A stretch of 64,000 nucleotides of DNA from Marsupella aquatica (Eukaryota; Plantae; Marchantiophyta): assembly GCA_973895155.1 (NCBI GenBank), contig OZ316897.1:10439832-10503831 (forward strand), written 5' to 3'. The position numbers were made by a program, and so were the translations under genes. Below are positions 34,048 to 54,661 of this stretch, in pieces. The notes below the pieces were generated by a model. The model ran no database searches. It was given only the letters and a program-made list of their open reading frames with translations, and was not told where the DNA came from. How positions within the stretch are numbered: position 1 is the stretch's first letter; each line of letters starts with the position of its first letter.

Positions 34048-37000
34048 TCATCGTTTTGTAACATTTGCTAAGTTGATTCCGTTTACTAGACAATTTCGTT
34101 TTGTATCCCTGTTGATGCAGCTGACCAATTTGCAGAAGGGAGTTTTTGAAGATACCTTTGGATAGCCCTCTTGATTGCCGTCTGTTTCATTGTCCTCCAT
34201 CATTGTTTGAATATCTCTAAAAAATGCCTCAACATCTCCGTCTTCACAGTCGAAGACCAATAGCTTTTCAACAAGATTCTGCAGAGATGCAGAAATGTTT
34301 TCTTAAAAGTCTTACCTTCCAAACAGTTCACCATTTTTTAAAACTTTCATCCTGTTGCTAATTGTTCATACCGATAGAACTTCCATACAGCAATTGCAGT
34401 CCATACAGTAAGCCAATCTCAAAGCCTTCTCACATCTACCATCTTATCCTTCGCAACTCTTCTTCGAGTTGCATGGTACTGTATCTCCTGCCCAGCTCGA
34501 ACCAGCTCCAAAACTTCTTTAGAGCGTTCAATAATCTCAGGGGAAAGACCTAGACGTCAGCCCACTCATCAATAGTTAATATTTACGAGATTGTAAAACC
34601 CATCTGACAAGGAATGCTGCTATAGAGTTGGAAGATTTACTGACCAGCAAGCTCCGCACAGTGTATACCTGTTGTGACAAAAGGTCAGTTGACAGTCAGT
34701 CTAAGGGCTCTCATGTTATGGCCTTGACGATAGGAATAGTAAATGCTAAAAACATTCGTGTCACCACTTAGCCTAGATCTTCACTTCACGAGATGGATGC
34801 CAGTCTCAAATCTCTAGCAAATTTGGGATGTCATAATTGGAGTAACAACAGGTTAGCTTAAGAAATAAGACTCACCATAGCTTGGTGCTGCAGATCCTGG
34901 TATGAGTCTGTACACAAGTTTAGTACAACAGTAATCAGAACAAGAGATGTAGTTTCTCACATTCGAGTCCATTTTAGACTTACCTAACGGTGACGCATAG
35001 CCTTGAGGTAATCTATGCGTCGTCTTCAGCTGTCCGTCTTGGAGGTGGCCTTTGCCAGAAGTCTTGTGTCATTTCGTTCTAGGGGAAAGGCAGGTAACGG
35101 ACGAGAATCTGTTCTGATGAGCCCAACAACAGCACAACACCTCTACTCAACATGAAAGGATGATTTGGACCAAGAGCTTCTAGGGCAAGTGGAACATAGG
35201 TATCGACCCATGTAAGAAGAATCGTAGGACGTAACAACATCCTTCTCCTGAGTTGTAGGTCTATACTGATGCAATATTCCGTGCAGTGTACTCATATTTC
35301 AAGGTCAGGACAAAGGGACTGCGTACGATACATTACATACCTGTATAGGAAAACAATCTCGTCAAGAGGATTGGCCTCGTTTCTCTTACTATCTATGATA
35401 CTCATGGTCTGGAAAATAACCTGAGGTGACTGTTAACACAAGATTCATTACTGTCATTACTCACTGCATCACTGAATTAAACTCCGCAGACAGAAAGACA
35501 AGATCGAACTATCATTTCGAACACAGGCCAACAGCATGACAAGTATCTATGGAGTTTTAAAATGTGTCAGGATAATCTTCTTTAAGTTTGATGCACAACT
35601 ATTCGATAAGTCGGTATTCATAGAAATTCATCTATCTCTATTGGCCTACCTTAGGCAGGAGGTCTTCATCGGTGACCTCAGAGAAATGAGTGATTGCAAA
35701 AACCTGAGGAGCCACATTGCACCTGAGTCAGGTTTAGGTGAGAGTCTTGGAATATATACGAGGGCTTGACTGTCATTCAAAAAGTCTCAAAGCGACTGGC
35801 TATTTCTAGTGTTTCTATCTGCAGGATGATCTAGATGCCTTGCCGGAGTTGTTTTCTTAAGTTGGCTTTTACTCAATTGTTGGGCAACTTCGACCAACAT
35901 TCCCGGAGGCCAAGTAACTTACCTTAGGTGGGGCTTCACGAGTTGCAAACTCGTTCAAAGTAGCGCACAAAAGACCTATGCCATCTGACAATGCGAGAGA
36001 TGACTTACAATGAAAACACAACACGAGCTGGAAATGAAAACATGATCAATCAGTAGAGTATTCTGCTATCCGATACCCATGAAGTCACTCAAAAGTCAGG
36101 GCTGGCTTCAAAGATCGAATCACTGACCTTCAGCCAACGTGCCCTTGCCAAACTCGTCAATGATACACAAGGATCTCGGAGTTGAGTGCCTGTACAACGC
36201 GAGTTAAAGTGCCGCTGAATGAGAACCCCAGGTTCTTTTTGTCGAAGGTCGCAGATCATCCGGGTCCATAGTAGCCTCCCACATTCTCATATATAGGCTA
36301 CAAATGAGATGTGAAGAAACTTCAAGCACCACATTCAAGATCTAACTGAGACCTAGCCTGAAAACATCATTAGGTGCGCGCTTCATTCAACTTTAAACTT
36401 GAAGTGCGGGATGCACACCTGAGCATAGCAGCAATCTGGTTCAGATCTATCATAAATGTGGACTGCGCCACTGATATGGTCTCATTGCTAACAATTCTTG
36501 TAAAAATTCTGCACAAGCGTTTGAGAAGCTTATTGTGAAGCTCAGTAGTTTTCGATCAGTCCCATGTGGGAGCTGCCATCCCCAAAATTAAGCGACACTC
36601 ATAAATTGGAGGCGGGACATGTACCTATCGGTCAAACCAACAATGGCCTGATCAGCTGGTACGAAGCTCCCGATGTGCGCAAGGAATACAATCAGTGCGA
36701 CCTACGTACCCACCGGGAACATATATTGAGTTGAAGTCATATCTAGCAAAGGCTGTTGGTTGCCTCATGATTATTCGAACGGAATTGGAACCTTGTGGTG
36801 GTGACCGAACGTACGTGGAAGTTTGAACAAAAGACTGAGAGCAACTAAAGAAGATTAATTAGATTCAAATTGCTTTGTGCTGCAGACATTATTCGGCTCT
36901 AATTGATTGATGCGGATTGATTAGGTCACGACAATAGTATGTCATTTCCAATTGTCTTCAGATTTGTACACGACCTGCTTTGCATAGATGCTCTTCCCGG

Positions 37001-40000
37001 AGTAGTTTGGGCCCGTCACAATGCAGATTCTCCCTGGAACATTTTCATTCCGATAAATAATTGTTCAATTAGTAGAGACGGTTAAAGTATGTCGCCGCGG
37101 GCTAAACGGTGTCGAAATATCTTATACGTGAACTGTTTCACGTGTCCGGAAAGTGCTGGTATGTCAGTTCAAACTTTCCCGGTACAGCAGCTCGATCTAG
37201 CTGCTGGTTTGAAAGAGAAATCACTCGTGAAGGTTTGCCAATCGCACTGCCCAAAACAACTACTAGAGTTATGTTTCCCAGCCCTACTCAAAATCACTTC
37301 TGGGATCCGTAAATAAAATGGACGCTCAACTTATTTAAGCCGGTGATCGATAGGAGATGTCTGGCATACGGGAATGTCCTAGAAATGATCAAATTATCAT
37401 CAAGTCCTTGTAATTAAGTGGATCAATATGCAACGAATTTGATTCATGGAACATAAGGAGTGAGTGCAGAACCCGTGGGTGATAGAGAAATTGTTATATA
37501 GAGTTCAAACCTTCGCTGCCAATTTCTGTGTCATTCGGTACGAAACTATCGACAGTCACTTCCTGAAGAATATGCCTGAAAGAGGGGGAATTCGTCATTA
37601 GAAAGAGGAGATGAATGGCCGATTGCAATACTAGCCTGCTACCGTAAACACTTGGGTGCAGCAATTCTACTTTATTGGTTGAAGTCGAAGACAGTGTCAC
37701 GTCACCTCCCATTCTTAATGATTAGAAGATTCTCCTCTGTCAATTCTGGTCTCGCGTAATTATGTTCCCGTGCAGCGATCGCAAGGGCAACAATACTGTG
37801 CAAAACTTGCAAAGGTCAGGAGTAGTTCAGAGATCTAGATCAGCCTGATGCATGTACCTCAAAGCGGATGATTCACATAGGAGATTAATAGTTAGAGGAG
37901 AGGGTGCACTTTTGGCATTTTGCGAATATCTGCTATGTAGTGCCTTTCAAGCAAGGATATCGCAGTATCGTCACTGAGTAATGCCTCCAGATCTGCAGAA
38001 GATTTTACCAGTCAATTTCGGCAGCAATCCTTGAAGCTTCGATCAACGATGTACTGTACTGCTCCACTCTCGTTTCCAGGTTTCGCAATACCGCCCGCTC
38101 CATGTCTGTAAGGACACATAAATTTGCAAATCTTTAAAGTCTCTAATCAATTATCTCTGAAAGTTCTCACGGATTTCTTTAAGTGCAGGATCGTCAAGTC
38201 AGACTCTGGATCATTCTCTCGCATATATATAGTAAACTTAGAATCTAGAATGAACTTATGCTAGCCTACGGCAGCCCAACGCAGCAATGGCATCGATCTT
38301 GCATCTTTCTAAACTTGCTGACGAATAATTAATCTCATGAAGTTGAGGTCTCTGGGGATCCAATCAAGGGAGCACACAACGATCCATATAAAAGTGCAGG
38401 AGGCAGCGAAGAGCAGACACTAAAGCAGACCGTGAGGGAAGCAACACCAAGAAAGGAAACAGAAAGAGCGGAACTGATGTAAAGCACATTGTTTAGGATC
38501 CGCGGTTCCTATTTGCGCAGATAGAGTTGGAGACTTAGGTTTTTATATGCCCACTTTCCAGGTTTCGAACGTAAGTGAGTGGTATTTGTGCCAGTGAGTT
38601 CAACAAGAGTGACTCTGCAGAAGTACCGGTGATTTTGCATGTGAAACTGAGTTAATGATTAATTAGAGCTGTAGTTTTTGGTTTGAACCGTTCAAGGACT
38701 CTTGAGATGGATGTTTTGAATTTCTTTATAGTTCAACATTCTCTGCTTAGCTACTTCATTCTCAAGGAGTGTCAACATCACAGTTTGCACCAAAATGGCG
38801 GTGCTACTTTGACATCTCTAGTAGCACTTGCTTGAACAAAATCGTGATGATGCCACCAGTACCTAATATTTTGTGATATATGTCACCAATGTTTTCATCC
38901 AACTCGTGCGTCTTTGATGTCCGGTAGAATGACTCCAGAGTCTGATTGTCGTCTTCCGAGCTCCCCTGAAACTGCCGGTAATATAGCGAAGTAATGAGAT
39001 CCAAAGGTCTAATAAAATAATGGTCAGATACAATGGCCTCGAGGACTGCTTCAGTAATGTCTGAGGCAAGTTGATGGAATACATCTACAGCGTCAAAGCG
39101 GTAACGCCAATGAATTAACTTACAGCGAATTCAAAATCAGGGAGTCTGCCCATTGTCTCTTCATCAAGTAGCGTCCCCTCGAAGCGCATGAAATAACCTT
39201 CAAAATAAATTTCAGAACAGCACCAACAGTTTCCTCAATTCAGGTAAGACCCTATAATTGTAAAACGATTTCCAGAAGGCTTTTAATTAGCAAAGTAATT
39301 GACATTGCGCGAAGCTTTTCGTAGACCATGACCATCACGTAATTTCTGTCGCACTAGGTGAAGTATATCATTAGTACAATCCTAAGCAATTTCATGATAT
39401 ACTGCTTCTTACAGTTCGAATTGACATTTGCTGGACTCCCCTCCAGCGAACTCGCATGCGCATCTCAGTGACATAATCTATTTAATTGCCTCTAAGCCAT
39501 GTACATCAATGGCAACAAACTTCATTTAATTAATCAGCTGGCAAGACATGAATATTTCCTTAGTAGCAGTCTAAGGAGGATCCCTGACACCTCCAGATCA
39601 CGGGTGGGCTTGGCAAGGTCCCAAAATATTCGAATTTCAGCACAGACAGAGACGACAGAGAATATAAAGAATAAAAGAAAGTTGAAAGGTCATGGCATGG
39701 ATGCCGTGGGTTTGGAAAGGTCCAAAAATATTTGATTTTCAGCAGATAAAGAGACGACTGAGAACACAAAGAATATAAGAAAGTTGGACTTGTACCAACT
39801 TGGGGAATGTAGACAGTGGAGGACACTTTAGATGAGCGCAGTTCTGGTGGCAGCCTATTCTGTTCTGAAGCTGTCACCTGTTCATCACGGGGAAAATCAA
39901 TCAGGTTCAGTAAGAAAACTACTTTGATTTCTTCATTTAGCCCTAGAGATATAGTTTCTAGGAGTCACACAAATGCAGCAACCACATGATCAGCTCATCC

Positions 40001-42230
40001 TCATAGTCTATCTCAAATTCACAAGCTGAATGAGAGATAGATTTAGTTCTTCAGATCTAGTTGTCAAGTAGTCTACAGCGTCAGGCACATAAGTGACGCT
40101 TCATAAACGTGCACTTACCACTTCATTGTAATACTTCTACCGAATCGTACTTCCTTTCAATCACATTGGTTGTATGAGGCAATATGACAAAACCAGCAGA
40201 ATGCAATTGACCATATGGTGATCAGACCCAATGACATTGGTTTTCATCAATTAGAAAATGCGGTCTAAGTGACTTCAAATAATGTCAGCCGGTAGTCTAA
40301 AAATCAGGGGTCGATACAAGGATGTTGAACATTCAAGATCTAAGATTCGATCGGTCATTACCACGTTTAGTACTAGTACATTTCCTTACCTGAAATAGGA
40401 AGTCGGGAAGGCCCTCGTACAATCTCTTGAGCTCGTCCAGCTATATAGTAAGCAGAAGATATGAATTATTAATAGCTGATATTTTTCGCCTTGAATTTGG
40501 AGACACTGATTATGATGTAAATTAATGTGATGTCCATATATATGACTTCAACAGACGGTTGGTTCACAAGGGGAGTGCAGCTTTGTACAGAAGCTGAAGG
40601 TAAAAAAATTCCACATATTTCAATCTATAGCGAATTTCTATTCCAAGAATTTGTTGTGCTCAATTTGGAAGACATCATGACAACAGAATGCCCGATCATT
40701 GAAGGTTCCCGTACATTCTGGGCATTCTGAGATAACACAACCTGACAGAAAGCTGGAGGATACCTGACTGTATATCATGCATCAAATTAAGAAGAGACGA
40801 AACTGATATAGCAAACTGAGTTACTCTTTGTACCTCTTCACAAAGACCATAAGCAACCATCGTATCGATGCTCTCACCGCACACTTGATGGAAGTCAATA
40901 CTTCCATTAATCTGCAGCTTCGAGCCCATACAGGGATGTTGTTAGGAGTCGCTACAAATAAATGAAATGTCCCGAATTAAATGAACCAAATTACTTGAGC
41001 TGACTTGCATTTACATCAGTCACCATTTTCTATAACAGGCAATGAGAAGGAAGGTTGCTTACGAGATCATTGACTTGGATGAGGTCTTCACTTATTGAGA
41101 TGAAAACCTGAAGACAGGAACGTGTGGATATTATCGAAAGTATAGAAAGTATAATTCACACTCGACGATCGGATGAAATTAATTTGCTGTGATTTTATGA
41201 GTTGATGTTTCTGGTCAGTCATCAAAGGCATCATGAGATGGCATTTTACAAACGCATGGATCTAGATAAGTAGTTTCATATATGATGTGCGCGGGAGTCA
41301 TGGCTCGATGCCTGACAAGCTATGACTTTCAAAATCTGCTCTTTCTGCCTGAAATAGTGACTTTCATAAGGTTCTTAAAATCACCTTTCTGACTATCTGT
41401 AATTGCATAAACGCGCCATGGTAATGATGTCTTTGCGATGTTACCACTTCCAACACTCCACGAATATGCCAGAGTGCACCTAGACTCTGTAGGAATGTCA
41501 ATCAAGGTCTATCAGTGCGGCATGACCAATCAAAATGTCCTCAATTTTCAAAATCCAGAACACAGTTATTGATATCCACGCCTGTCATAGAGAAAAAAAC
41601 ACTGACATTAAGCACAGGGTGATAGCGATTCAGCTTAGTACCTCGACCAGCATAAGCCAGTCACTAGACACTGATCCTGAGCTTGGAGATAGTATTTTCT
41701 GTCCAAGGATCACGCCAACCTCTGTTTAACCTTCGATCAAACGCTAATTGTACATATACTAATCCTGCATGGCTGGCGCTTCTAAGCTTCTTCAATTTTA
41801 GCTTAAATCCCTTGACTTGACATTTAACCGGGTACTCCTTAGTATATCGGTTAGCATAAATCTCGACTAGAAGTTTGGGTGAAATTGAAAGATGGTAAAG
41901 TAAAAGTGAGTGAATAGGATGTTATTTTGGACATTCGGATAGGTAAGTAGATCGAATAGACATTTTAGCAAATCCACGAGCATAAATCTCGATTCATCTG
42001 AGAACAAACTGATTTATCAATGATTGAATGTAATTTATAAAGAACATTGATACCTTCAGAATACGAGGAACGTCCTTAAATTTTTTCAGACAACCTAGCA
42101 AAGCGTCTGTTGTGTCCACAGTCGACCTCAAGACTTGTATCTGGCATGCCACGTCGAAATGATCTATGAGGAAGACGACATCAATGTCCCTTTTAAACGG
42201 GTGGATTTGAATGCAGGGAGATGTAATATA

Positions 42231-42261
<31 letters not shown>

Positions 42262-45200
42262 CACTAGATACATGTACGTTCGTTTTAGATTCTTTTTTAA
42301 TTCTAAACTTTTCTTTTAGAAACTTCCAGACGCCGTATGACAGCTCATTTGGATTCTATTGTACCTACCGAGTCAAGTCGATCATTCAAGACGTGTAAGT
42401 CCAGGATTGGCCGGAGAAACCATAGCCTGCACACGAGAGCCTCATGTCCATAAGTGACTTGTGAGAAATTCTGCTAAATACAGAATTTGAATGGACTATG
42501 TCTGTATGCAAGCAGTAGCAGACCCTGTACTACCTACAGTAGTACCGGAAATAACCTTTCAAGGTTGCCATCAGTTACAAGACGGTAATTTCGAACAAAC
42601 CTCAAAAGCCGCCTTCCCATCGCAGTTACGCACTGAGGCAGACCTTGCACACACCAAGAAAACGCAGTTTTAGACTTCGATAGGAACAATGTTGATTCAG
42701 CAAATGCGAACTCGGATCTTAATCTTTGAGTCCCACTATCCTAGATTACTGGACCAAGCGCGGCGATGCAATACCGCACATGGGTCCACAAGTTTGAGCA
42801 TAGAAACTTGTCCACGTGCGTTTGGATTAGAAACGAAGGCATACCGTATTTAGCATACCGAAAACTGAAAACCTGCAGATGATCCAGGACCAACTTCCAA
42901 TTAAAAGTAGTGCACAGAATATGAAGATAATGGAGAGAAGATTACATCCGCATTCAACCACCATACTTTCTGAAGCTTCGGTCAGCGGAACGGTTGAAGT
43001 TTAGCATGCTTAGCCCACTCAAATAAATTACCTACTTCGAAAATGAATGTCAAGACGAAAATTATCACCTATATTCTTGACTTACCCTTCCTTTGGTTTC
43101 CCCAGACCCATTGCACTGGCATGTTCTTCTGTCCGAAAAATCTGCAACGCATCATGAGTGGTGGCATCGATGTACAAGAATCCGTTTCTGAATGCGATGA
43201 AATTAAGTGTGTCATCTTGTAAAACTCCCTCTGATTAATGTAGATCCACGTCATCGCTAAACAGGCACGCCTACCGCAAGCTAGCATGAGTTATTAATTT
43301 TGGAGCTCGATGTGCACGTGTTATCGAGTACGATGGAAATCGAATCAGGTCCCTGGCCGGTGCAAGCATACAAATAAATCTGTGATCTACTTGAATATTT
43401 AGTCTCGAGGCAGCTTAATTTGCCATGAGATAGGTACTCTTCGCTTGCTAATTCTGAATTGAAGATAGTACTATCGATCTGAGCTCCGTGGCGATATGCG
43501 AGCATCAGGATAATCCGTTTTATGCCGTCATAGTAGCACACCAAGATCTGGCCGGATACAAGGAAAGCTCAGAAATACTTTCGATCTGCGATTTTTGAAT
43601 GGAGTTGCCATCCAACTGAGATTCGTTTTGATTGGTCACTACTGTATCAATCAGCATTTCTTGCTGTAATATCGCAAGAAGTCCGCCGGCAGCTCGTACA
43701 ATTGTCTCATTGCCCAAATTTATCATCGAATTTAGCTGCGGAATGGCGAGAACTGCTTACTGTTAGTCCCACAACATTTGAAGCTGGTGAATTTAACATT
43801 GGGGATCAAAAAGACTGGAATATCAAGTTTAAAAATCGTTGGGTCCGGGCCTATTACTTATGGTCTTCTCTTCTACGTACAAGGGCATAGCTAATTAAGG
43901 AAACAGTACGTAAAGGATGTGCTGATGTCAGTTCTAAAGGTTCGTATTTGAATAATCCTAATTAAGCTTACATGGTCGTTGGTCTTAGATATTGAGATAA
44001 TGAGCAAAGGCCTGAAAATCTACCGAGAACAACGAAACCGGTCTTTTCTTGCTCTGCAATTTCAGAACCTCGATATGGCAATTTCCTTTGACCGAGACGT
44101 GAACGTAAGTGCTAGCTATTTAGAGGTATACCTGTTGCACAGTTTACTCAAGTTGCCCTCCCGGCTAGGCAGGTCTACACGTACATTGGCCAGTACCTTC
44201 TCATGTGTTTGCCAAGCGGAACGAAATACTTGAGCAAACTGAGCATCGAATATCTTCAAGGTTCCAGTTCGAAAATCAAATTACAAGTGCAGGTCGCACT
44301 CCGTCGATCTAAGGAGGCGCAAGTTGATTGATAATTTGGAATGTTGTAAAGGCAGCGGTAGTGTGTCCTACAAGAATCCTTTATTTACTCCTCAGCTTCA
44401 TGGTCTCGATGATTTCCTCAAAAGGCCCAAGTCCGTCGGTCCGGGAGAGGAACTCTGCCTTATATTTAATATTTAGCCCTTGATCCTGTGATACATGGCT
44501 AGGAGAACAGCTATCGAAAAGGGCGCGTGTAAACAGAGGAAGGGACAGTACGGAGCGGATAACTTACGACATGTATCCTTTCCTCATTGTTCAAGTCGGT
44601 ATCCATGCCTTTAACTTGAAGATACGCCAACCTGCAGGTTAAAAGTACAATGCAATGTTGAGACGTGAGAATGGTCTGCAGTTCAGTATTGATACTTTCT
44701 TGAAACCTCAGCCCTTAATGAAGACTATCTTGACAGCTAGAAGTAATTGTATGAATAAGCTCGCTGAAGCACGAGCCCTGAAAACGGAAGTTCGAATTAA
44801 TGAATTCTAGTGACATTTGAGTTTCCTCTGCAATCGACAGTGCTACAGCGCTCGCAGCGCAGACGAATTCTGCAGGATGCCATCATTTTCACGGGTCATG
44901 CCGCAGATGCAACGAGGACTCAAGTGTCCACTGGATTCCCGTTGCCAATTAAAAGGACTTGTGCCTGAAGGTCTATATGGTATCTACTTACCTGTGTCTT
45001 GCTTGCTGAAGACTGAACAGCGCACTTTTGACGAGTTTTACGCTAGGAGCGTTCCCATCCTGTCGGACTAGTCCAGTCCCACGTATTCATGTGTGTTCAG
45101 ATGAGTTTAGATCTAATTACACGTCCTGCGAGGCCTTGGCGCCAGCCGCTTTTCTACTTCTAGACTAGCATACTCTACAACATTGCTCTCGGACTCGAAG

Positions 45201-46368
45201 GTAACGTCGATGGAGATTATATAGTACTGAGAGTTAATTGACGGTGAAATGGCTGCGAAGAACCAGTTAAAAAGTTGACATGAGCCTTTCGTAACTCACC
45301 CCCCAGCCCCCAGCCTCTAGTATTATGGTTGGAATAGAGATGATCACCTTTATGTTGAAGAGCGGCCACAAAACCGTCATCCATCTTGGTGCTAGTGAAA
45401 ATAACTTCAGGTTCAGCCTGGTACTTGACTGAACACTCGATGAACAACAACCTACGTGAGATCATGATGTTTCAGGTCGATATAAAAACTTGTGCAACGC
45501 AGGTTACGATAATCTGTGTACACTTACTCAATTGTAGGCACGGAAACTCTTCGTCGCCCTCGTCCCACGCGTCCATCACAAACATTTCGCGACTAGTGAC
45601 GTCGTAGTAGGCTACGCCAAGCCTGAGACAATGTCACCAAACTCCAATCGAAGGATTCAAATTTGAAACGATCTTTACACATTGTAATGTTCAAGAAACC
45701 AAAGAAATAAATCGCGGTAGTCCAACATCCCGCAAGTACCTTTGCCCGTGCATGATGCACGCCATATAAATCTGAACAGTATTTAGCACAGTGACATTAA
45801 TTAGATATGACTACGTGAAGGTTCAGTAGGTATAGCAGCTAGTTAGTTGATCCATTAGTAGTCATGTTGTCGTGTACGTGCATAAGACAAGATGACCATG
45901 TAAAACTGAACAACACCTCTCGATTATTGATCGGAAGATCCTAACTGACTTTCGAAGCTTCATATCTATCATCGCACTTGGAGAGCATTGTCAGGTGCAA
46001 GGACTCGATATCCTCTCGGTTAAAGCAGCTGCGGTAATCATTCCAAGATGATCTACACAGTGCTTATGAAAAAGGAGTCCGTGATGATTGGCTCTCACCT
46101 TCGAGTCCGAATCATACTCGAGATCATTTTCTTCCTCCCCTTCGATCGAATTTTCTGGTCGACTATCATTGTCCACCCGCGAAGATACCCAATTTCCCGA
46201 AGAGTCTCGTTTTCTGGTTATTTTCTGAGCCCCGTTCTGAGCAGGGCGAGATCTAGCCTGACCGGCAGCACTTCGAGAACCCGAGGACCTCTGCTGCACA
46301 CTAACATTGATTCCTGAACTCCTGTTTGTGGTCTTCGATGTTGAGGACTTTGATGTTGAGGGATCCAT
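34048..46368 (-). CDS. MSH5: Meiotic MutS homologue MSH5, ~34 coding exons
   Basis: GT-AG exons assemble into the MSH5 sequence: [11 protein letters not shown] (45740-45771), LGVAYYD (45528-45622), [28 protein letters not shown]...[46 protein letters not shown]-like AEIDC. Further motifs: Walker [10 protein letters not shown] (36975-37033), [14 protein letters not shown], Walker [10 protein letters not shown] (36128-36189), [21 protein letters not shown], and a terminal VEAFFRDI. The extent of the last exon is uncertain. Confidence 0.97.
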
Positions 46369-47009
46369 CGATGGAATTAGGAAATAATCCAAGTTATGAA
46401 AGAAAGTCTGTCATGATGTCAAGGACGGGTCTGATGAACTGAGGTGTTGGAAGATGGCCTGCATTGGCTAACAAGCCTCGCTTTGAAATTCAATTGCTTG
46501 ACTCCTGCAGAGCCCACATCAGCAGGCTCAGTTCATCTTCTTGATGGGTGAATTAAAGCTATCATACATTCCATCAATGAGACAGCTATGCAGAACAGAT
46601 AGAAACAAACGGTGGACACGTTGCATCCAGGTAAGTGTTAATACCTGACTAATACTAGCTGCAATGGCGGACATTTTTCGAAAGTGTGTTACCAAGGAGT
46701 GTGCCGTGCAATCTGTAATTAAAGGTCGATTTGGTGATCTCTTTTACATCTCGCTAGCTTCCAGCAAATCAAACATTTACTCGCAGTTTCATTCTAACTA
46801 CTTAGCTGTAGAACTGGTGACGAAAATGCTCACCACTTTGTATACAAAGGATGACTGAATCTCATTCATCAAGTTGATGACTGCTTTTGCCAGGGCCTAC
46901 GAGGCTTCGCGAATAGCATGAACAAGTTTCCCACCGAATTTCACCTTGAATGAGAATGATGTGGTTCGTCAGAAAGCATGACTCGATTGAAAAGTCGAAT
47001 GCACGCTGA

Positions 47010-48221
47010 ACATGCAAATTCATGTGACTGACGATTTCGGCAGAGATTCCCGAGCGAAGTGAGGGCTCCCCCGAGCAAAATTTGTTGCTGGACATCGATC
47101 CGTCCGCAGGAAGAAATCGCATGGGACAGGAGAAGAAACGGGGCAAGATTATGCACTCTTAGTTTACTTCAGTTTCTTGTTCGATAGCGAGAACCTGGAG
47201 TCCTGATTGCCCCCAGACATTTCAAAGTGAACAGCCGGAGCCAGCATTGCAGAAACTGTAGTAGCAATTTAGATGTCAAATTCGAAGATCAGTGCAAGCT
47301 CCAAAAGCCCGCGCACAGACAATGCCAAACTCGAAGATCACTGAAAGCTCGACAGGCCAGTGTACAGGCTGACTGTTCGTTACTCAGCTAAGATTTCTGT
47401 GCGGATCTTACACAAAATGCTTAAACCTCGTTGCGAACGAATTGAACGAGAGCTACCATTGCTGCTAGGAGAACGAATCGAATTGAACGAATTGAAAGAA
47501 TCAAACGAGCGCTTCTTCAGTGAATAACGGAAGGAGCGAGAGAAAGTAGAACTCCACGTACCTGTTTAATTTGAAACAAACATACTGGACTCTTTCTGTA
47601 CTCCGATGTTCCTCCGAGTGATCGTGAAGCTCTCCACAATTACTTCTCAGAATTGCTAGAATGCCACTCTTTCAAGAGAAAACAACCAGGATGCCACTCT
47701 CAAGGGTCTAGCTACAGTTAACTACGACAAGATCGACGGCCTACAACAGACACAAGATCAACAATGGACGGTCAAGATTCGAAGTATCTGACCTCCCTCA
47801 CAGTGACGCCAACCCGCCCTTTTACTGTCCTGCCATCTCTTTCACCGTGCGATCCTCCACTGAGAGATTCAGAAAGACTGAAGTGCTGTCGGACCCAAGG
47901 CCGTGTTTTCGTGTGTGGGCCTCTGCATAGACCCATGGACACTCTGTAGCGAATGCCCGAGCTCGCGGTGCGATGGGAGGGAGGAGCAATAATGAGGCGT
48001 CGATGAGGGCATTGGTGTGAAGCCCCGCATGTGAACTGCGAGGATTTGAGCTTAGAAAGGGGGATTGAAAGCCTGAAAAGTACAGTAGACAATAACATTG
48101 AGGCGTGTGAGCTGAGTCAGTTGTTGTATGAGTGGACAGCAGTAAGGAGAGCGTATTACGATCCCTCGCAGGAAGATCGGGGATCAGATCGAGTATGTGG
48201 TTTTAGCAGGTGCAGTAGCGT

Positions 48222-48255
<34 letters not shown>

Positions 48256-48720
48256 TTGAGAAAGCACTCGGTTGATTCGTTGAAATAGTTGGCAACTAGG
48301 TTTAAGGTTTTGTCAGAGCTTCGCCCAGCAATCTTAGCAATACTAGCACTCTGTCTCATTCAATTTGTTTGCAACTAGGTTTAAGCATTTTGTCATAGCC
48401 CAACACAGAAATGTTAGCTTTACAAGCACTTTGTCTGTGCACGGGTTTTCGAGCTTTCAGTGATCTTCGAATTGAGGGCATCTGCATGGGCTTCTGAAGT
48501 TTTCAGTGATCTTAGCATTTGACGTCTAAGTTGCCACTTCGAGCTCTGCAATGATGGCTCCACCAGCTCAGTTTGTCGTCTCTGTGGCAGTCCGGACTCT
48601 CGGTTCTCGTCTTCTCGAGGTCGAACAAGCATTGAAGAAAACTAAGTGTGTGCATCATATCTTCCCTATTCTTCCCGTGTCCCCTGCGGACAAGGGCCCT
48701 GCTTTCATGAATTGTAATGA
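47010..48720. repeat. Degenerate long inverted repeat (arms ~47010-47635 and ~48146-48720) spanning the divergent MSH5 and hydrolase 5' regions
   Basis: 47279-47322 matches the reverse complement of 48431-48473 at 39/44 nt. Colinear similarity is also visible at 47141-47240 vs 48560-48666, 47385-47450 vs 48355-48420, and 47562-47635 vs 48146-48209. Confidence 0.9.
48225..48253 (+). repeat. (CT)n microsatellite at the start of the putative hydrolase 5'-UTR intron
   Basis: Read directly; it lies just after the candidate donor CAG|GTGCAG at 48209/48210. Confidence 0.9.
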
Positions 48721-48771
48721 AACGTCGGCCATTTACTGCGCAGGTTTGTGGCAGCTTGCAAAGGTGTCACA

Positions 48772-51700
48772 ATGGCGGGCGGGCCAAAAATTAAGGCGTC
48801 TTCTGCACGGGCCCATACCCGCAAACCAGCAAGACGCTCACCCAACAGAGGAGGGAGCGGCCTTGGTACGCTCGTGTAGCTCATTTGGAATCTTTTTAGC
48901 TGTTTGATCTCGTGGAAGTTTGTACTCCCCACAATGTAGTGTCTTGTATTGTTCGCATCTTACCCGTCAAACTTTCTCCTCAGCGTGAGGATGGTTGTAA
49001 CCTGGACTTTCGCAACCGTGGTACAGATGAATTTCCCATCATTATACAATGTGTCTCTATTGTAGTACTTCCTATCTCTCAATTGTCTGTTTTGGATTTC
49101 CTAATTTGTACAAGTTCAAAGTTTGCGAACCCGCAAGAATTTTTTTATCTTTTACATTCAGTTTGTTCCAATTTTGAGATCCTTGTCGCGTTACAACAGT
49201 ACATAGCATGATCTGTTTCTGCTACATTGCCATAACTATGCTTCATCTGCGTTAAAGGATCGAGTGGACTGACGGTACTAGTTCATCTGCTGGGCCGAGG
49301 GCTAATAGGTTTGATGATCATCTCTGCGTCATTCGCTATCATAACTTGGATGGCCTACAGACACATCCAACCTCCTCCTCCAAAGGTTAGCTCCCCTTCC
49401 ACAGTAGGAAGACGTCACATGAGTGGATGACAAGGATTTTGGCTTTTTTAGCATTGTACTTGTCCCGTGGAAAGATGTTCAGCTAACGTAGGATGGTTTC
49501 TAGTCACCGAGTTTTCTTGGCCTCAGATTAGATAGATTAGATAACTAACTCGTCTCACACACACTATGGGGGGGTACAACTACCGCAAAAAGGTTTCCTG
49601 CTCACGCAAGGGGTTTTTGCCTTGCAATAGTCCAGTCTACACTTCTGATTATGGCAAGCGGATTGGTCCTTTTGACATGGTTTGCCAACAGATGCAATTT
49701 CAATACAAGAAATGCTAACATTCATGCCTGAGTGAAGGAGAATATGCATATTTTAGCTTGAAGACCTATCTAAGTTGGAATGGCCAGCAGTCCGTCCTAA
49801 CAAAGGGTTTGTTATGTTTTCGAAATGGAAGATTTGTGGAGCTCCAGGTGGGCCGCCTGTGACTGCCCCTCGGATTCAACTTAGAGATGGTCGCTTTCTT
49901 GCCTACAAAGAGGCTGGAGTGCAGAAGCAGAACGCAAAGTACTCTATTATAGCTGTGCATGGCTATGGCGGATCTCGACATGCTATGCTAGGAGGCTTGT
50001 CTGATGTAAATATATTCTTCCTCTTCAAATTCTAGGCGGCTAGTAGCATTTCACCAACGTCCGTTGCTTCTTTATGTCGGCCAGATGGCCTTGCCCTTGT
50101 CTAGTCGGGCTTGCCATATTAGCGTCGTGATTTATCTAATCGGGCAAGAAATTGTTAGATATCCTAGAACTTGTAGGATTTGTAAGCCAAATCCAAGCCC
50201 CCTAGAATTCTGTGGATCAAGTGCTGCAAAGGAGATTAGACACCCGTTTACATCGTCTGCGGTATTTTGGATCATCTCTCTGAGTTCCTTCCAGGGGATG
50301 TTGCGCGTCCGCGGGAGGCAGGCTTCGGCTTCTATCATGGTTGATGATAGGCAGGCTGCACTTAAGAGGTTGTATATGTTTGTGGGGCCTTGATAGTGGT
50401 GGACAGTAAGGAGTCTGAGAGTGTGCGTTCCAAGGACACTCTCAGGGCCGCCAGTTGATATGTTCAGTATCTGTGACTTGCTTGCTTTGTTGACTGGTAT
50501 AGTCCTTAGGAATGACCTCTTGAAGATAGACCAAGTGTAGAGGCTTCTTCAGAGTTGACTGCCATCTTCAAAGAACAAAAAGTCCTTGCATTGAGTGCTT
50601 TGAAAATGACCAGCTTTGTTTTCTATTTGGTTTGTCACAAGAGTAACACTCGAGGGTAGTGGGCTCCATATTTATTGTGCGTGTCGTGAGTAGGGAGTGG
50701 CAATCAGCTAAAGGCGACTTGCCGCAGTTTGTCAACTGTAATTATCTACGGTGCATGAGATCTAACGATAATGACGTTCTTGCAATTGCAGGAGATCATG
50801 AAGGAGCTTCGAATCTACATTGTGGGGTTTGATCGGGCTGGATATGGACAAAGTACCCCCAATCCGAAGCGAACCATGAAGTCTGATGTGTACGATGTCC
50901 AGGTGAATGTCGAGACCCTGGGTATCAGAGCAATTAACAATATTGTGTATCCCCTATATCGAGCGTGGCATTAAAGCTGAGATTGATTGACATAACAATT
51001 GCGTTTTCTGGCTGCTGCGAATACGCCAGGACTCTGAAGGTTTGATCAAGGTCATTGATCTCTTCTGGAAATTTTCTTGCCCTGTACTTGAAGGATTTTA
51101 GAAAACACTTGGAAGTTAAACTATGTTTTCCTCTGCAACAGGACCTTGCAGATGGCCTGAAATTAGGACCGACCTTCTATGTTGCAGCGACTTCTATAGG
51201 AGGCTACACCGGATGGGGTCTGATCAAGTACCTTCCTCACAGGTTTGGATTCCTGCAATACCGAATCCGACGTAATGCATGTGGTATTAGCAGCAGTAGG
51301 CACATACGTAAATGGGTTGCGTTGGGGTATGAGGGTACAATTGCGTCATAGAATCCAACCACGTCCATTCTATATGTATGGTTTAATCATTTGCTTGGAA
51401 GTACCAGTTCTAGAGTCAATGCTATGTAGTTCAGAAGTGGACACATAGCAATCGTAAAGCTTAATGCAAAAGTTATATTCATTAATAGATGCTATCGTTT
51501 CTCCTCTCAGGTGATACTTATCATCTTTCGCACCTTGGCAGGTTAGCAGGAATAGCTATGTTTGCACCGGTTACAAATTTTTGGTGGAAAGGATTTTCCC
51601 CAGAAGTAGTAAATGCTGCATTCAGTAATCAATACATTGGTGACCGCCTGGCACTATCGGTTGCTCATCATGCTCCTTGGCTAGTGCATTGGTACATGAC

Positions 51701-52303
51701 ACAAACGTGGTTTCCCACTTCATCCACTGTAAAAGCTGAGAATGCTCAACTGGATGAGATAGATAGGCTGAGAATTTCTGAGTATTACAGTGAAGTTCAT
51801 GCAGCGGTAAGCGCCATGCACTCAATGTTTTTTTGTTTCACAAGACTTCAAGCTTTCCTCTGTTCAACCTTGCTTATTAACAATAATCTGTCTGCGTAAG
51901 TTGGGCACTATGGAAAGCATTACGATGGTTAATCGCTGTAGAAAGGGCGTAAGGTTTGAAGCGAAGCACCTGTGTCCTAGTACTAACAATCTGTGAGTCC
52001 TTGCAGAACCTTTTGGAGCCAACCCAGCAAGGTAAAGACGAGTCTCAGTTTCGTGACATGCGGAATATGTTCGGGACTTGGGACTATGAACCCTTCGAGT
52101 TAGAGAACCCTTTTGCATCACGGACTGGGGCGGTGCACCTGTGGCAGGGAGATAATGACTACCTGGTACCAGTTACGCTGCAGCGTGAAGTAGCGAAAGC
52201 ACTTCCTTGGATTCAATACCATGAGATTCCTGAAGCAGGCCATAGTTTGCTAGGTATCCCAGGTCAGGCCGATATAATGATTCGGGCCTTACTTCAATCG
52301 TAG
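48772..52303 (+). CDS. Plant alpha/beta-hydrolase family protein with N-terminal membrane anchor, 7 coding exons
   Basis: Exons: 48772-48865 (MAGG..ASSARAHTRK), 49258-49385 (TM segment, IQPPPPK), 49832-50005 (ICGAPGGPPVTAPRIQLRDGRFLAYKE..HG), 50792-50902 (FDRAGYGQSTPNPKRT), 51142-51242 (ATSIGG), 51542-51807 (PVTNFWW), 52007-52303 (WQGDND, YHEIPEAGH). A Ser-Asp-His triad is present and the phases are consistent. Confidence 0.95.
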
Positions 52304-54661
52304 AAAGTAAGGAATATCGTTCAATGATTTGTGACTAGAGAGTTGTCTCCCAGACAGGGACCTCATTTAACACAGGTTTTGTAAGTTAATTACGATTTTC
52401 GTCCAAAGGGAGAGAATGTGGCTTCGGTAGCAATGAGAAAGCATTCAATGTCGTTAGTATGACATTCTGGAATGGACCTGGAGCAAAGGCAAATGATCGG
52501 GGATCAAATCACAACAACCCTTTGCAATCGTGAATAAATTCGTTGAAAACAAAGTCCAATTCGGACTTTTAAAGGTGGAAGTGGTCTAAATGGACTTGGG
52601 GAGTTGTGCGAGGGGAGTGGCCTATCCTGGTCCTTGCTACTGCCCCAAATTTATTTGCAACAATAGGATTACTTTTCTTGGTAAAGAACTTAATTCGATT
52701 TGTATATTTTACCCACAGGTCCAAATTTATTGAATATTAAATGTTTATTTGTAATACTCTTCACAATTGTTCTGCCGCGTGCAGTGAGAATTTAGTCTGA
52801 AAATGTTCCACCTAATTTGGAAGAGAGGTGTCGTTAGTGCACTTGGGTTTCGAAGTTCAAATGCGTAGTTCAACTTGAAAATTAGCCGTAGCATGAACAT
52901 CTAAAAATTTGCACGCAAAAAAGGGTTAGGATACAGTATTATGACACAGTACAGTACTGTAATGTCAATTCAACCAAGAGGAAAGGACACAGTACTACAG
53001 AGAGAAGGTTTAGTGTCATGAAGGATGACTTTTAGACATAGCCTTCCATAGTAGAGAGTGATTTACTTAAATTGTTGGCTTTTTTAATAGTGGGTCTATT
53101 GCCCAAAGCAAGCTTCGCAACTAACTTGCAAGCATGGAAAACCCCTGGTTTATACTGGTTTACATAATTCTCACAACTACCCCAAGCCCATGTGGCTCAT
53201 AACACATTTGACAGCCTGCCCAAAGGATCCATATTACATGCATGAACAGAATTTGGAACAGAACTGTCTGGAGTGGATGGAAATTGCATTAGTGCAATTT
53301 TTTGGAGTCATGTTTGACTTCAAGGTTCGATGTTATGTTGCACCCAGGATAGATTCTTCTTAGAGATAATATGTTTTGATTATATCAATGCTTTCATTAT
53401 TTGGTTTAAAAAGTTACATGGTCCATATAGGCTTTTATGTCATATCACATTATCATATCATATTGTATGGTGTATTTGAGCATCTAAAAAATTTCATTAT
53501 TTCCCTTGAATGGACAACACTAAGTAAGAAATCTAAATTGAGCCCTTCATAGATCATGGATGGACAAAGGACATACATAATGTCTGACAGGTTTCCTAAA
53601 ATTGGGCTTCATTCTCTAGAACTGAAAATTTGTTTTGAGTTATTTAAAAGTCTGGAAATGGACACTTAAATAGGTTATGGAAAATCTGGGAAGAGGCTAA
53701 TGATTTGGAATTCTTTGCAGCCCTCAGATATGCGGATGCCCTAAGTGGGGAGGATAAACCTCAGGCAGCATCAGGATTAGCACACAAAAAGCATTTGGGC
53801 CTTGCAACTAGCCACCCCGAGGGGAAGAGGCCTCCAGGGGTTTAAGTAAGGATGAAGTGGAATCTAACGTCTACCCAATGTAAGCAATGGAGGTGGTGGT
53901 TGTCAAGGAACAAGAAAAATGCATTTAAGGGTGAGAATGGTAGGGGGTTGGAGGTCAAGTGCAAAGTCCATTAATTTGTACTAATGCTGCTTTGTAAGTG
54001 AAGACTATGCAAGGAAGCTGTAATAGCAACCGCTCTATACTGAATTATAGTATAATTAATGTTCATGCTTTCCACATCAAGATTCTTGATGCCCTGTGGT
54101 TATCAATGCCCCATTGAATCGGCCTCTAGACCAAAGCAAAGTGAATTTTAACTTTTTATCTAGACCTGAGCGCCACCACTCAGAGTGCCAGCATGCTTTT
54201 CAAATTTGAAAAGAATGCCGTGACTGAAGACATAATCAATTCAAGGGCCCTTATCAGCAAAGTGTATACCAATTAATAGTAAAAAGATTTTTGATATGTT
54301 TTCTCCCTTATTTTGTCCCATCTACATATATCAAACTGCCAAAAAACAAGGGGCGCCCAAGCAAGAGGCTTGATCCCAGAGACATAAAACCCGGTCAAGG
54401 GGAGGGAGGCAAAAACAGACCACTACCAGAGCAGGAACCAGGAAGATCAAGAATCTACCTAAGTATCGACAAAACTAAAGAGCCTGCTAGAGCTCCGTGG
54501 AGAATTACATGGGAGGGTCAAGCGGAGGAATCTGACTAGAAGCCCTAACCCCATCGTATGTGATTAACAGGTACATTAGTGCTGCTGTACGTATACATAA
54601 TCCGCTAATATGTATTGGAACTACAACGTATTTAGTTTGTTATCTTCTTTGTTCTTTTTTT

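What the first reader, a model, noticed from the sequence alone, without database searches (positions are those of the whole stretch)
47010..48745. Mirror-image 5' leaders: head-to-head MSH5 and alpha/beta-hydrolase genes share a homologous first exon, splice donor and 5'-UTR intron via a ~600-bp inverted duplication
Seen: the two arms (~47010-47635 and ~48146-48720) are colinear reverse complements around a ~510-bp spacer. Read in each gene's own sense, both give GGAGAGC..ACGATC.CTCG.AGGAA.ATCGG...AGTATGT...CAG|GT. The candidate donors are 47562/47561 on the minus strand and 48209/48210 on the plus strand. Both then continue with a CT-rich tract and ~450 nt of shared intron sequence, including a shared internal duplication of TCGAAGATCACTGAAAGCTC. 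Candidate acceptors are 48743 (hydrolase) and ~46505 (MSH5). Inference: one gene acquired its transcription start and leader by inverted duplication of the neighbour's, creating a symmetric bidirectional promoter. That could couple a meiotic crossover gene to an unrelated enzyme. An old foldback element co-opted as two leaders is the alternative. The arms could also form a cruciform or dsRNA on read-through.
Basis: partly seen in the sequence, partly recalled or inferred. Interest (0 to 1): 0.8.

Follow-up and report, generated by a model that had tools for sequence, protein, structure and literature searches.

The report
Inverted duplication at a gene-order junction
Two ~545-bp mirror-image DNA copies really do sit between a MutS/MSH5-type meiosis gene and a hydrolase gene in this liverwort genome, most likely a scar of the rearrangement that brought the genes together; no available data show whether they act as matching gene leaders.

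Summary
Arm A (47101-47644, minus sense) and arm B (48141-48692) are colinear reverse complements: about 80% identity at ungapped sites, Smith-Waterman score 227 against 21±2 for shuffles. They flank a ~500-bp spacer that is neither duplicated nor palindromic.

The window comes from a leafy liverwort. The hydrolase is 82% identical to a Calypogeia fissa protein. Homology to the Calypogeia locus covers only the hydrolase transcription unit and starts at 48698, 5 nt outside arm B. No arm, spacer or MutS-type sequence lies within 10 kb of the orthologue in Calypogeia, Marchantia or Riccia.

The arms differ as much as orthologous introns do (K2P 0.234 against 0.239). The event is therefore about as old as the species split, and the arms have since drifted at an intron-like rate.

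The best reading is a fold-back or template-switch inverted duplication at a rearrangement junction, copied from the MSH5 side to the hydrolase side.

The "mirror-image leader" function is plausible. The spacer has the strongest GC-skew flip in the window, and the acceptor-like CAG is conserved. It is untested, because no transcripts of this lineage were reachable and arm B's donor is weak.

A transposon relic is not excluded. This is a known kind of event, of moderate interest.

The parts
47101..47644 (-). Arm A of the inverted duplication, on the MSH5 side and read in minus sense
   Evidence: Alignment; nhmmer envelope; inverted blocks I1-I8
47645..48140 (.). Non-duplicated spacer (about 496-510 bp) with a local GC peak and a mirrored GC skew; candidate shared divergent promoter
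   Evidence: Not self-complementary. GC 0.57 at 47800-47999. Skew -0.22 then +0.32, Fisher p=2e-5, the largest flip of 1270 sliding windows. No Pfam hit on its ORFs
48141..48692 (+). Arm B of the inverted duplication, on the hydrolase side; probably the copy
   Evidence: It ends 5 nt before homology with Calypogeia begins
47562..47635 (-). Candidate leader exon in arm A, ending at the strong donor CAG|GTACGT (intron would start at 47561)
   Evidence: Donor score 9.9, the best on the minus strand in 46400-47700. Its use is not shown
48146..48209 (+). Candidate leader exon in arm B, ending at the weak donor CAG|GTGCAG (intron would start at 48210)
   Evidence: Donor score 3.9 against 4.4-8.4 for real donors of the same gene. 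Its use is not shown
48225..48254 (+). (CT)n microsatellite just after the arm B donor; arm A has only a CT-rich remnant
   Evidence: Sequence; alignment
47273..47367 (-). Tandem sub-repeat (period 49) in arm A, also present in arm B
   Evidence: Family D1; cross-arm pairs I5 and I6 reach 87-96%
48443..48519 (+). Homologous tandem sub-repeat (period 46) in arm B; this tandem repeat predates the inverted duplication
   Evidence: Family D4. It contains the longest exact shared stretch, 22 nt at 48449
48277..48434 (+). 79-bp tandem duplication present in arm B only; arm A has one copy at 47386-47451
   Evidence: Family D3 and pairs I2, I4, I7; self-hits
48698..48771 (+). Hydrolase-proximal block conserved with Calypogeia (85% ungapped identity), containing the acceptor-like CTGCGCAG|G (AG at 48742-48743)
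48772..52303 (+). Alpha/beta-hydrolase gene: 7 coding exons, ATG at 48772, stop at 52303
   Evidence: tblastn of Calypogeia P0155 gives 82% mean identity over all exons. Pfam Abhydrolase_1/6 and Hydrolase_4 hit the orthologue P0004
46372..47100 (-).
   Evidence: No similarity to the hydrolase side or to Calypogeia. Many equivalent AG sites
34422..46371 (-). MutS-family (MSH5-type) gene with many small exons; putative ATG at 46371
   Evidence: Colinear Pfam hits to MutS_III (42348-42473) and MutS_V (36945-37064, 36373-36555, 36123-36203). Walker [11 protein letters not shown] and Walker [10 protein letters not shown]

Best explanation
The structure is the scar of one old, lineage-specific rearrangement. 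A segment of about 545 bp on the upstream side of the MutS/MSH5-type gene (arm A) was copied in reverse orientation. The likely mechanism is fold-back (hairpin-primed) synthesis or a replication template switch at a broken end. This left a ~500-bp uncopied loop (the spacer). The end of the copy (arm B) was then joined to the hydrolase gene about 75 nt upstream of its start codon. The event created the head-to-head gene pair. It also replaced the hydrolase's ancestral upstream DNA with a mirror image of its neighbour's. The spacer is therefore the most likely place for a shared divergent promoter. The arms are likely to be transcribed as 5'UTR and/or 5'UTR-intron sequence of both genes. Shown here: the duplication, its limits, its age, its coincidence with the synteny break, and the compositional symmetry of the spacer. 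Inferred: the fold-back mechanism, the direction from the MSH5 side to the hydrolase side, and any promoter or leader function.
For: The arms are real and colinear, and the spacer is unique and not palindromic. Window/Calypogeia nucleotide homology is confined to 48698-52419 and starts 5 nt from the end of arm B. The hydrolase introns align at about 80%, so neutral DNA is still alignable between the two species. No arm, spacer or MutS-like sequence lies within ±10 kb of the orthologue in Calypogeia, Marchantia paleacea or Riccia fluitans. Arm-to-arm K2P is 0.234 and orthologous-intron K2P is 0.239, so the event dates to about the time of the split. One event with arm B as the copy explains why the arm end and the homology end coincide. 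No TSD, transposase remnant or extra copy was found. The spacer has the local GC maximum and the largest GC-skew flip in 64 kb. The mechanism has precedent: inverted copies around a non-duplicated spacer, sometimes joined to a translocation partner (PMC3907307).
Against: The MSH5 locus of a relative could not be fetched, so it is not shown that arm A plus spacer is ancestral upstream DNA of that gene. Intergenic DNA also fails to align downstream of the hydrolase. The edge of a conserved block can therefore coincide with the edge of any lineage-specific insertion. The spacer (about 500 bp) is shorter than the 766 bp-70 kb range reported for human fold-back events. The expected inverted microhomology at the spacer boundary cannot be read after about 23% divergence. 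There is no transcript evidence of any kind for this species.
Confidence: 0.45

Rival explanations
1. Transposon relic. The unit 47101-48692 is either an old non-autonomous long-TIR or foldback-type element (1.6 kb with ~545-bp terminal inverted repeats) or two oppositely oriented copies of one ~545-bp repeat family. It inserted upstream of the hydrolase, and any leader or promoter role is incidental.
For: The architecture of long terminal inverted repeats around a unique core fits. The arms carry internal tandem sub-repeats. The outer ends are sharp. Arm B ends where lineage-specific DNA begins. The window is TE-rich (copia RT). A 64-kb window could only reveal a very high-copy family.
Against: No target-site duplication was seen at either the outer or the per-arm boundaries (sequence reading). 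No terminal motif that I recognise as typical of TIR elements was seen. There is no transposase or other Pfam hit. No further copy was found in 144 kb by blastn or nhmmer or in metagenome contigs for the best-conserved 22-mer (uninformative). Under a simple insertion, homology with Calypogeia should resume on the far side of the element, and it does not.
Confidence: 0.3
2. One reading: both arms are in use as homologous first exon, GT donor and 5'UTR intron (donors at 47561 and 48210, acceptors at 48743 and about 46505), driven by a symmetric bidirectional promoter. This is compatible with the best explanation and is its strongest form.
For: The CAG|GT sites sit at homologous positions. The arm A donor is the best on its strand. 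The acceptor-like CTGCGCAG|G and about 45 nt upstream of it are conserved with Calypogeia at 85%, above the intron level. An unspliced arm B would put at least 7 upstream ATGs ahead of the hydrolase start (sequence). The spacer shows a GC-skew flip. A relative's RNA contig begins exactly with GTGAGT, 343 nt upstream of the homologous AG, as a retained 5'UTR intron would.
Against: The arm B donor scores 3.9, below every real donor of the gene, and is the sixth-best GT in the arm. The leader is not significantly more conserved than the rest of the arm. The L004/L005 RNA contigs are unspliced at the homologous site. GCGCAG|GTTTGT also scores 8.7 as a donor. The MSH5 acceptor is arbitrary among many AGs. 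No transcript data exist for this species.
Confidence: 0.22
3. Reverse polarity: arm B is the hydrolase's ancestral 5'UTR intron or upstream DNA, arm A is the copy, and Calypogeia later lost or replaced its own upstream region.
For: The arms are symmetric, so the sequence alone cannot orient the event. The arm B-specific 79-bp tandem duplication and the (CT)n expansion say nothing on polarity.
Against: It requires Calypogeia's independent breakpoint to fall within 5 nt of the limit of the duplication. Marchantia and Riccia also lack anything arm-like upstream, although they are too diverged to count for much.
Confidence: 0.1
4. Hairpin-RNA or proto-miRNA locus: the inverted repeat is transcribed through and processed into small RNAs.
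For: The 1571-nt unit would fold as a long hairpin, with MFE -641 against -469±21 kcal/mol for shuffles and 376 inter-arm pairs.
Against: The longest perfect helix is 22 bp and the arms are only about 80% matched with 15% indels. There is no Rfam match above noise. The arms resemble no coding sequence in the window, so no target is evident. The unit lies between divergent genes, so through-transcription is not expected.
Confidence: 0.04

Closest known systems
Fold-back (hairpin-primed) inverted duplications with a non-duplicated spacer, described for human constitutional rearrangements and yeast double-strand-break repair (PMC3907307; PMC10622511 by title and abstract only)
   Same: Two inverted copies flank a single-copy spacer that corresponds to the fold-back loop. 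The far end of the inverted copy is joined to unrelated DNA (an inverted duplication juxtaposed to a translocation). Here that junction is 5 nt from the start of the conserved hydrolase block.
   Different: The duplicated segment here is only about 545 bp, against kilobases to megabases. The spacer is about 500 bp, against 766 bp-70 kb. The event is ancient and fixed in a liverwort lineage. The diagnostic 2-8-bp inverted microhomology can no longer be read.
Duplication of the BRCA1/NBR1 bidirectional promoter with its flanking first exons in catarrhine primates, giving BRCA1P1 and NBR2 (as summarised in bioRxiv 10.1101/2025.11.08.687349)
   Same: A promoter-proximal segment with leader exons was duplicated. 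As a result, transcripts with homologous 5' ends start at a second divergent promoter.
   Different: In that case a whole bidirectional promoter was duplicated in tandem, and transcription has been documented. Here only one side was copied, in inverted orientation around a single shared spacer, and the recipient is an unrelated, intact protein-coding gene. Use of the copy is unproven.
Foldback and long-TIR non-autonomous DNA transposons of plants (from my own knowledge)
   Same: Long inverted terminal repeats with internal sub-repeats around a short unique core, with a total size of about 1.6 kb.
   Different: No target-site duplication, no recognisable termini, no transposase remnant and no second copy in the sequence available.
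Origin of plant MIRNA genes by inverted duplication of target-gene sequence (Allen et al. 2004, from my own knowledge)
   Same: A local inverted duplication that could fold into a hairpin.
   Different: The arms are non-coding, match no gene in the window, and pair too imperfectly (22-bp longest helix).

Membership tests
Fold-back inverted duplication at a rearrangement junction | Two copies of one segment in inverted orientation | tested here: met
   Score 227 against 21±2 for shuffles; about 80% ungapped identity over about 545 bp
Fold-back inverted duplication at a rearrangement junction | Single-copy, non-palindromic spacer between the copies | tested here: met
   Spacer 47645-48140; self reverse-complement score 40 against shuffle 47±10
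Fold-back inverted duplication at a rearrangement junction | Distal end of the inverted copy joined to DNA of different ancestry | tested here: met
   Calypogeia homology starts at 48698, 5 nt after arm B ends. Nothing to the left of it is found in L003
Fold-back inverted duplication at a rearrangement junction | Short inverted microhomology between the two ends of the spacer | tested here: inconclusive
   A shared AGTAA with a 4-nt indel extends the arms to 47644 and 48141 (sequence). After about 23% divergence it cannot be told apart from arm sequence
Fold-back inverted duplication at a rearrangement junction | Source copy lies in its ancestral context (arm A and spacer upstream of MSH5 in relatives) | not testable with these tools
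   A full-length MSH5 of a relative could not be reached.
Foldback / long-TIR DNA transposon | Target-site duplication flanking the element | tested here: not met
   The flanks ...CATCGATCC|arm A and arm B|AAGGGCCCT show no direct repeat, and neither arm taken alone has one (sequence). The element is old, so decay is possible
Foldback / long-TIR DNA transposon | Multiple dispersed copies in the genome | tested here: inconclusive
   No other copy in the 64-kb window or in 80 kb of related loci by blastn and nhmmer. Only a very high-copy family would be expected to show up. The genome itself is not searchable here
Foldback / long-TIR DNA transposon | Transposase or captured coding remnant, or known terminal motif | tested here: not met
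   No Pfam hit on ORFs of the arms, spacer or flank. The termini GTCCGCAGG... match no TIR motif that I know
Bidirectional (divergent) promoter pair | Two genes head-to-head with transcription starts less than about 1 kb apart | not testable with these tools
   The genes are divergent but the distance from ATG to ATG is 2.4 kb. TSS positions need CAGE or RNA-seq
Bidirectional (divergent) promoter pair | Compositional signature (GC peak, mirrored strand skew) at the shared region | tested here: met
   GC 0.57; skew -0.22 then +0.32; the largest flip of 1270 sliding windows. This is a hint, not proof
5'UTR intron of the hydrolase ending at 48743 | GT donor and AG acceptor with contexts in the range of the gene's real sites | tested here: inconclusive
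   The acceptor pyrimidine content is 0.6, within the real range of 0.5-0.7. The donor at 48210 scores 3.9, just under the real range of 4.4-8.4
5'UTR intron of the hydrolase ending at 48743 | Spliced transcripts | not testable with these tools
   No protein or contig of this species or a near relative is in the collections. The cDNA-like L004/L005 of a relative with 73% amino-acid identity is unspliced at the homologous site
MSH5 (MutS homologue 5) | MutS domains III and V in colinear order | tested here: met
   Exon-wise Pfam hits to MutS_III (E=0.011) and to MutS_V positions 1-18, 40-85 and 72-91 (E=0.0024, 3.9e-6, 0.026). Each is below the gathering score because exons were scanned singly
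MSH5 (MutS homologue 5) | MSH5-specific sequence features, as opposed to MSH2/3/4/6/1 | not tested
   The Walker B DEFGKGT and motifs such as FMIDLNQ look MSH5-like, but only from my own knowledge. The PDB search gave only weak Msh3 and MutS P-loop hits

The most novel reading that the evidence does not exclude
A single fold-back repair event both created a new head-to-head gene pair and equipped an intact housekeeping-type hydrolase with a mirror copy of a meiotic MutS-homologue's leader exon, splice donor and 5'UTR intron. The two unrelated genes would now be transcribed from one symmetric promoter with homologous, independently spliced leaders. This would be a natural case of promoter and leader capture by inverted duplication.
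Probability: 0.2. Interest if true: 0.55.

Novelty: new member of a known kind. Interest (0 to 1): 0.3.

Why it matters
If the copy is in use, this locus would be a clean, datable example of how a gene that loses its upstream region in a rearrangement is rescued by a mirror copy of its neighbour's promoter-proximal DNA. It would also show how a bidirectional promoter with homologous leaders can arise in one step. It would further predict partial co-expression of a meiotic crossover gene and an unrelated hydrolase. If the copy is not in use, the locus is an ordinary decayed rearrangement scar or transposon relic in a liverwort intergenic region. Its practical value is then as an annotation warning: the arms may mislead 5'UTR models of both genes.

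Tried and rejected
1. Outward extension of the arms to 47010 and 48720, and palindromy of the spacer: at chance level.

2. Similarity of the arms, spacer or MSH5-side flank to the Calypogeia locus: at chance level.

3. Apparent arm motifs (CACAGAAATGTT, AGCCCAACAC) in the 5'UTR of the cDNA-like contig L004: score 24 against a shuffle maximum of 25, so rejected. A 21/23 match of L004 341-363 to L003 9063-9085 only equals the best shuffle and is left as unexplained.

4. The L008 cDNA has only 52 nt of 5'UTR and is not alignable. The P0159 contig had no DNA available.

5. Marchantia and Riccia are too diverged upstream of the ATG to test conservation of the acceptor.

6. Two metagenome scans, for the arm 22-mer and for a wobble pattern of the hydrolase coding start, gave 0 hits and are uninformative.

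7. Earlier notes of this scan, looked up by place, sequence and words, held nothing relevant.

8. Rfam: only a sub-threshold MIR6438 hit at E=0.86.

9. Pfam on ORFs of the arms, spacer and flank: only noise.

10. Word searches with a hydrolase exon, with Marchantia P0004 and with Calypogeia P0155 found no protein of this species or of any relative closer than Calypogeia.

11. My first "real donor" scores used exon ends that were 1-3 nt off and are void. One search replaces them.

All searches were exon by exon and by reference. One search concatenated approximate exons only to count frame and stops, and that result was discarded.

13. No contig looked human.

Full report
**Observation**

The inverted similarity is real. 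The repeat finder reports eight colinear inverted blocks between 47176-47451 and 48277-48629.

A gapped local alignment of the reverse complement of 46900-47700 against 48080-48880 runs from 47635 down to 47118 and from 48146 to 48688. It has 392 matches in 570 columns and a score of 227, against 21±2 for shuffles.

A profile built from both arms (nhmmer) sets the limits at 47101-47644 and 48141-48692.

Beyond the outer ends there is no similarity above chance, and the spacer of about 500 bp is not self-complementary.
- the shared GGAGAGC...CAG|GT head
- the donors at 47562/47561 and 48209/48210
- the CT-rich tract
- the shared internal tandem repeat

The shared tandem repeat (47273-47367 and 48443-48519) pairs copy-for-copy across the arms (87-96%), so it predates the inverted duplication. 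A 79-bp tandem duplication (48277-48434) and the (CT)n run are specific to arm B.

**Flanking genes and organism**

Single exons were searched by reference.

A hydrolase exon found only fragmentary relatives. The representative search gave a 373-aa Marchantia paleacea protein. Using that protein as the query, the nearest full-length relative of the window turned out to be a Calypogeia fissa protein, P0155. It is 82% identical over seven exons, including the first 33 residues at 48772-48870.

The window therefore comes from a leafy liverwort related to Calypogeia but not the same species, and the ATG at 48772 is the conserved start. The orthologue carries Abhydrolase_1/6 and Hydrolase_4 domains.

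The gene on the minus strand gives colinear exon-wise Pfam hits to MutS_III and MutS_V. It has a Walker A of [10 protein letters not shown] and a Walker B of IIDEFGKGT. The MutS family call is supported by these results. The MSH5 subfamily call rests on my own knowledge of the DEFGKGT motif and was not tested.

**Comparative evidence**

The Calypogeia locus (L003) aligns to the window only from 48698 to 52419. That span runs from 74 nt upstream of the ATG to about 115 nt past the stop, and includes all introns. The left end of this homology lies 5 nt beyond the end of arm B.

Neither arm, the spacer nor the MSH5-side flank has any counterpart in 24 kb of Calypogeia sequence.

No MutS-like exon lies within 10 kb of the orthologue in Calypogeia, Marchantia paleacea or Riccia fluitans. 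The head-to-head arrangement is therefore specific to the window's lineage, as far as these three genomes can show.

Arm-to-arm divergence (K2P 0.234) equals that of orthologous introns between the two species (0.239), while exons differ by 0.132. The duplication is thus about as old as the split from Calypogeia, and the arms have since drifted at an intron-like rate. The leader segment (52/61 identical) is not significantly better kept than the rest of the arm.

**Mechanism**

A single event accounts for the three structural observations: inverted copies, a unique spacer, and an arm end that coincides with a change of ancestry. In this event the MSH5-side segment is copied backwards from a broken end, the spacer is the fold-back loop, and the end of the copy is ligated to the hydrolase at about -75.

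This is the architecture described for fold-back inverted duplications, which have a non-duplicated spacer and can be joined to a translocation partner (PMC3907307). Here it occurs on a much smaller scale.

The reverse polarity would need an independent Calypogeia breakpoint within 5 nt of the duplication limit.

A transposon (long-TIR or foldback, or two inverted copies of one repeat) remains possible, but several results count against it:
- There is no target-site duplication, recognisable terminus, coding remnant or second copy.
- Homology with Calypogeia does not resume on the far side of the unit.

Two caveats apply. Intergenic DNA downstream of the gene is also unalignable, so the edges of conserved blocks naturally coincide with lineage-specific DNA. 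And 64 kb can only reveal a very abundant family.

**Function**

Nothing here shows transcription.

Evidence in favour of the mirror-leader idea:
- Arm A carries the best donor on its strand (CAG|GTACGT, score 9.9).
- The acceptor-like CTGCGCAG|G and the 45 nt before it are conserved with Calypogeia at 85%, above the intron level.
- An unspliced arm B would place at least seven upstream ATGs before the hydrolase start.
- The spacer has the local GC maximum and the largest GC-skew flip in the whole window without being palindromic (-0.22 then +0.32, p=2e-5, 0 of 1270 sliding windows). This is the pattern expected for divergent transcription starting near 47900.

Evidence against it:
- Arm B's donor (CAG|GTGCAG, 3.9) lies below all six real donors of the same gene (4.4-8.4) and is only the sixth-best GT in the arm.
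- GCGCAG|GTTTGT scores as well for a donor as for an acceptor.
- The only informative RNA contigs are L004 and L005, from a relative with 73% amino-acid identity. They are colinear with the genomic block through the homologous AG, so they are unspliced there.
- The proposed MSH5 acceptor near 46505 is one of many similar AGs.

L004 does begin exactly with GTGAGT, 343 nt upstream of that AG. That would fit a retained 5'UTR intron, but it is not proof.

The hairpin-RNA reading is weak. The unit would fold (MFE -641 against -469±21), but its longest perfect helix is 22 bp, and Rfam finds nothing.

**Verdict**

The functional half is plausible but untested.

Both ingredients are known kinds of event: fold-back inverted duplication, and duplication of promoter-proximal DNA with leader exons, as at BRCA1/NBR1. 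I therefore file this as a new member of a known kind, with moderate-to-low interest.

The tests that would decide it are transcript and TSS mapping in this species, a genome-wide search with the arm, and the MSH5 upstream region of Calypogeia.

Noticed in passing
window 47636-48145: The spacer shows the largest GC-skew reversal of the whole 64-kb window (-0.22 in the left half, +0.32 in the right half) and a local GC peak of 0.57, without any sequence palindromy.
   Followed up: yes
L004 1-385 (and the near-identical L005): A cDNA-like contig of a hydrolase orthologue (73% amino-acid identity) starts exactly with the donor-like hexamer GTGAGT and carries 385 nt upstream of the ATG. That stretch includes the block homologous to window 48698-48743. 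It may be a retained 5'UTR intron of 343 nt.
   Followed up: partly
L003 9905-9940: Calypogeia has an 18-bp perfect tandem duplication (CACACCTGTTTTCATGAA twice) exactly where homology with the window begins.
   Followed up: no
L004 341-363 against L003 9063-9085: A 21/23-nt match (GCTTCTGAC..AGGTTTGT.GGT) links the relative's 5'UTR, next to the acceptor-like site, with a Calypogeia site about 920 nt upstream of its ATG. The score only equals the best of 100 shuffles, so it may be chance or a remnant of a shared upstream exon.
   Followed up: partly
window 55207-56267 (minus strand): Ty1-copia reverse-transcriptase remnant (Pfam RVT_2, E=1e-19), broken into several ORFs, downstream of the hydrolase.
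   Followed up: no
window 48277-48434: A 79-bp tandem duplication is present in arm B only. Its two copies are about as diverged from each other (75-80% identical) as the arms are, so it arose soon after the inverted duplication, or arm A lost one copy.
   Followed up: partly
window 48195-48206 and 47571-47588 (minus): Both candidate leader exons keep an AGTATGT upstream ATG that opens a tiny ORF (3 and 5 codons).
   Followed up: no
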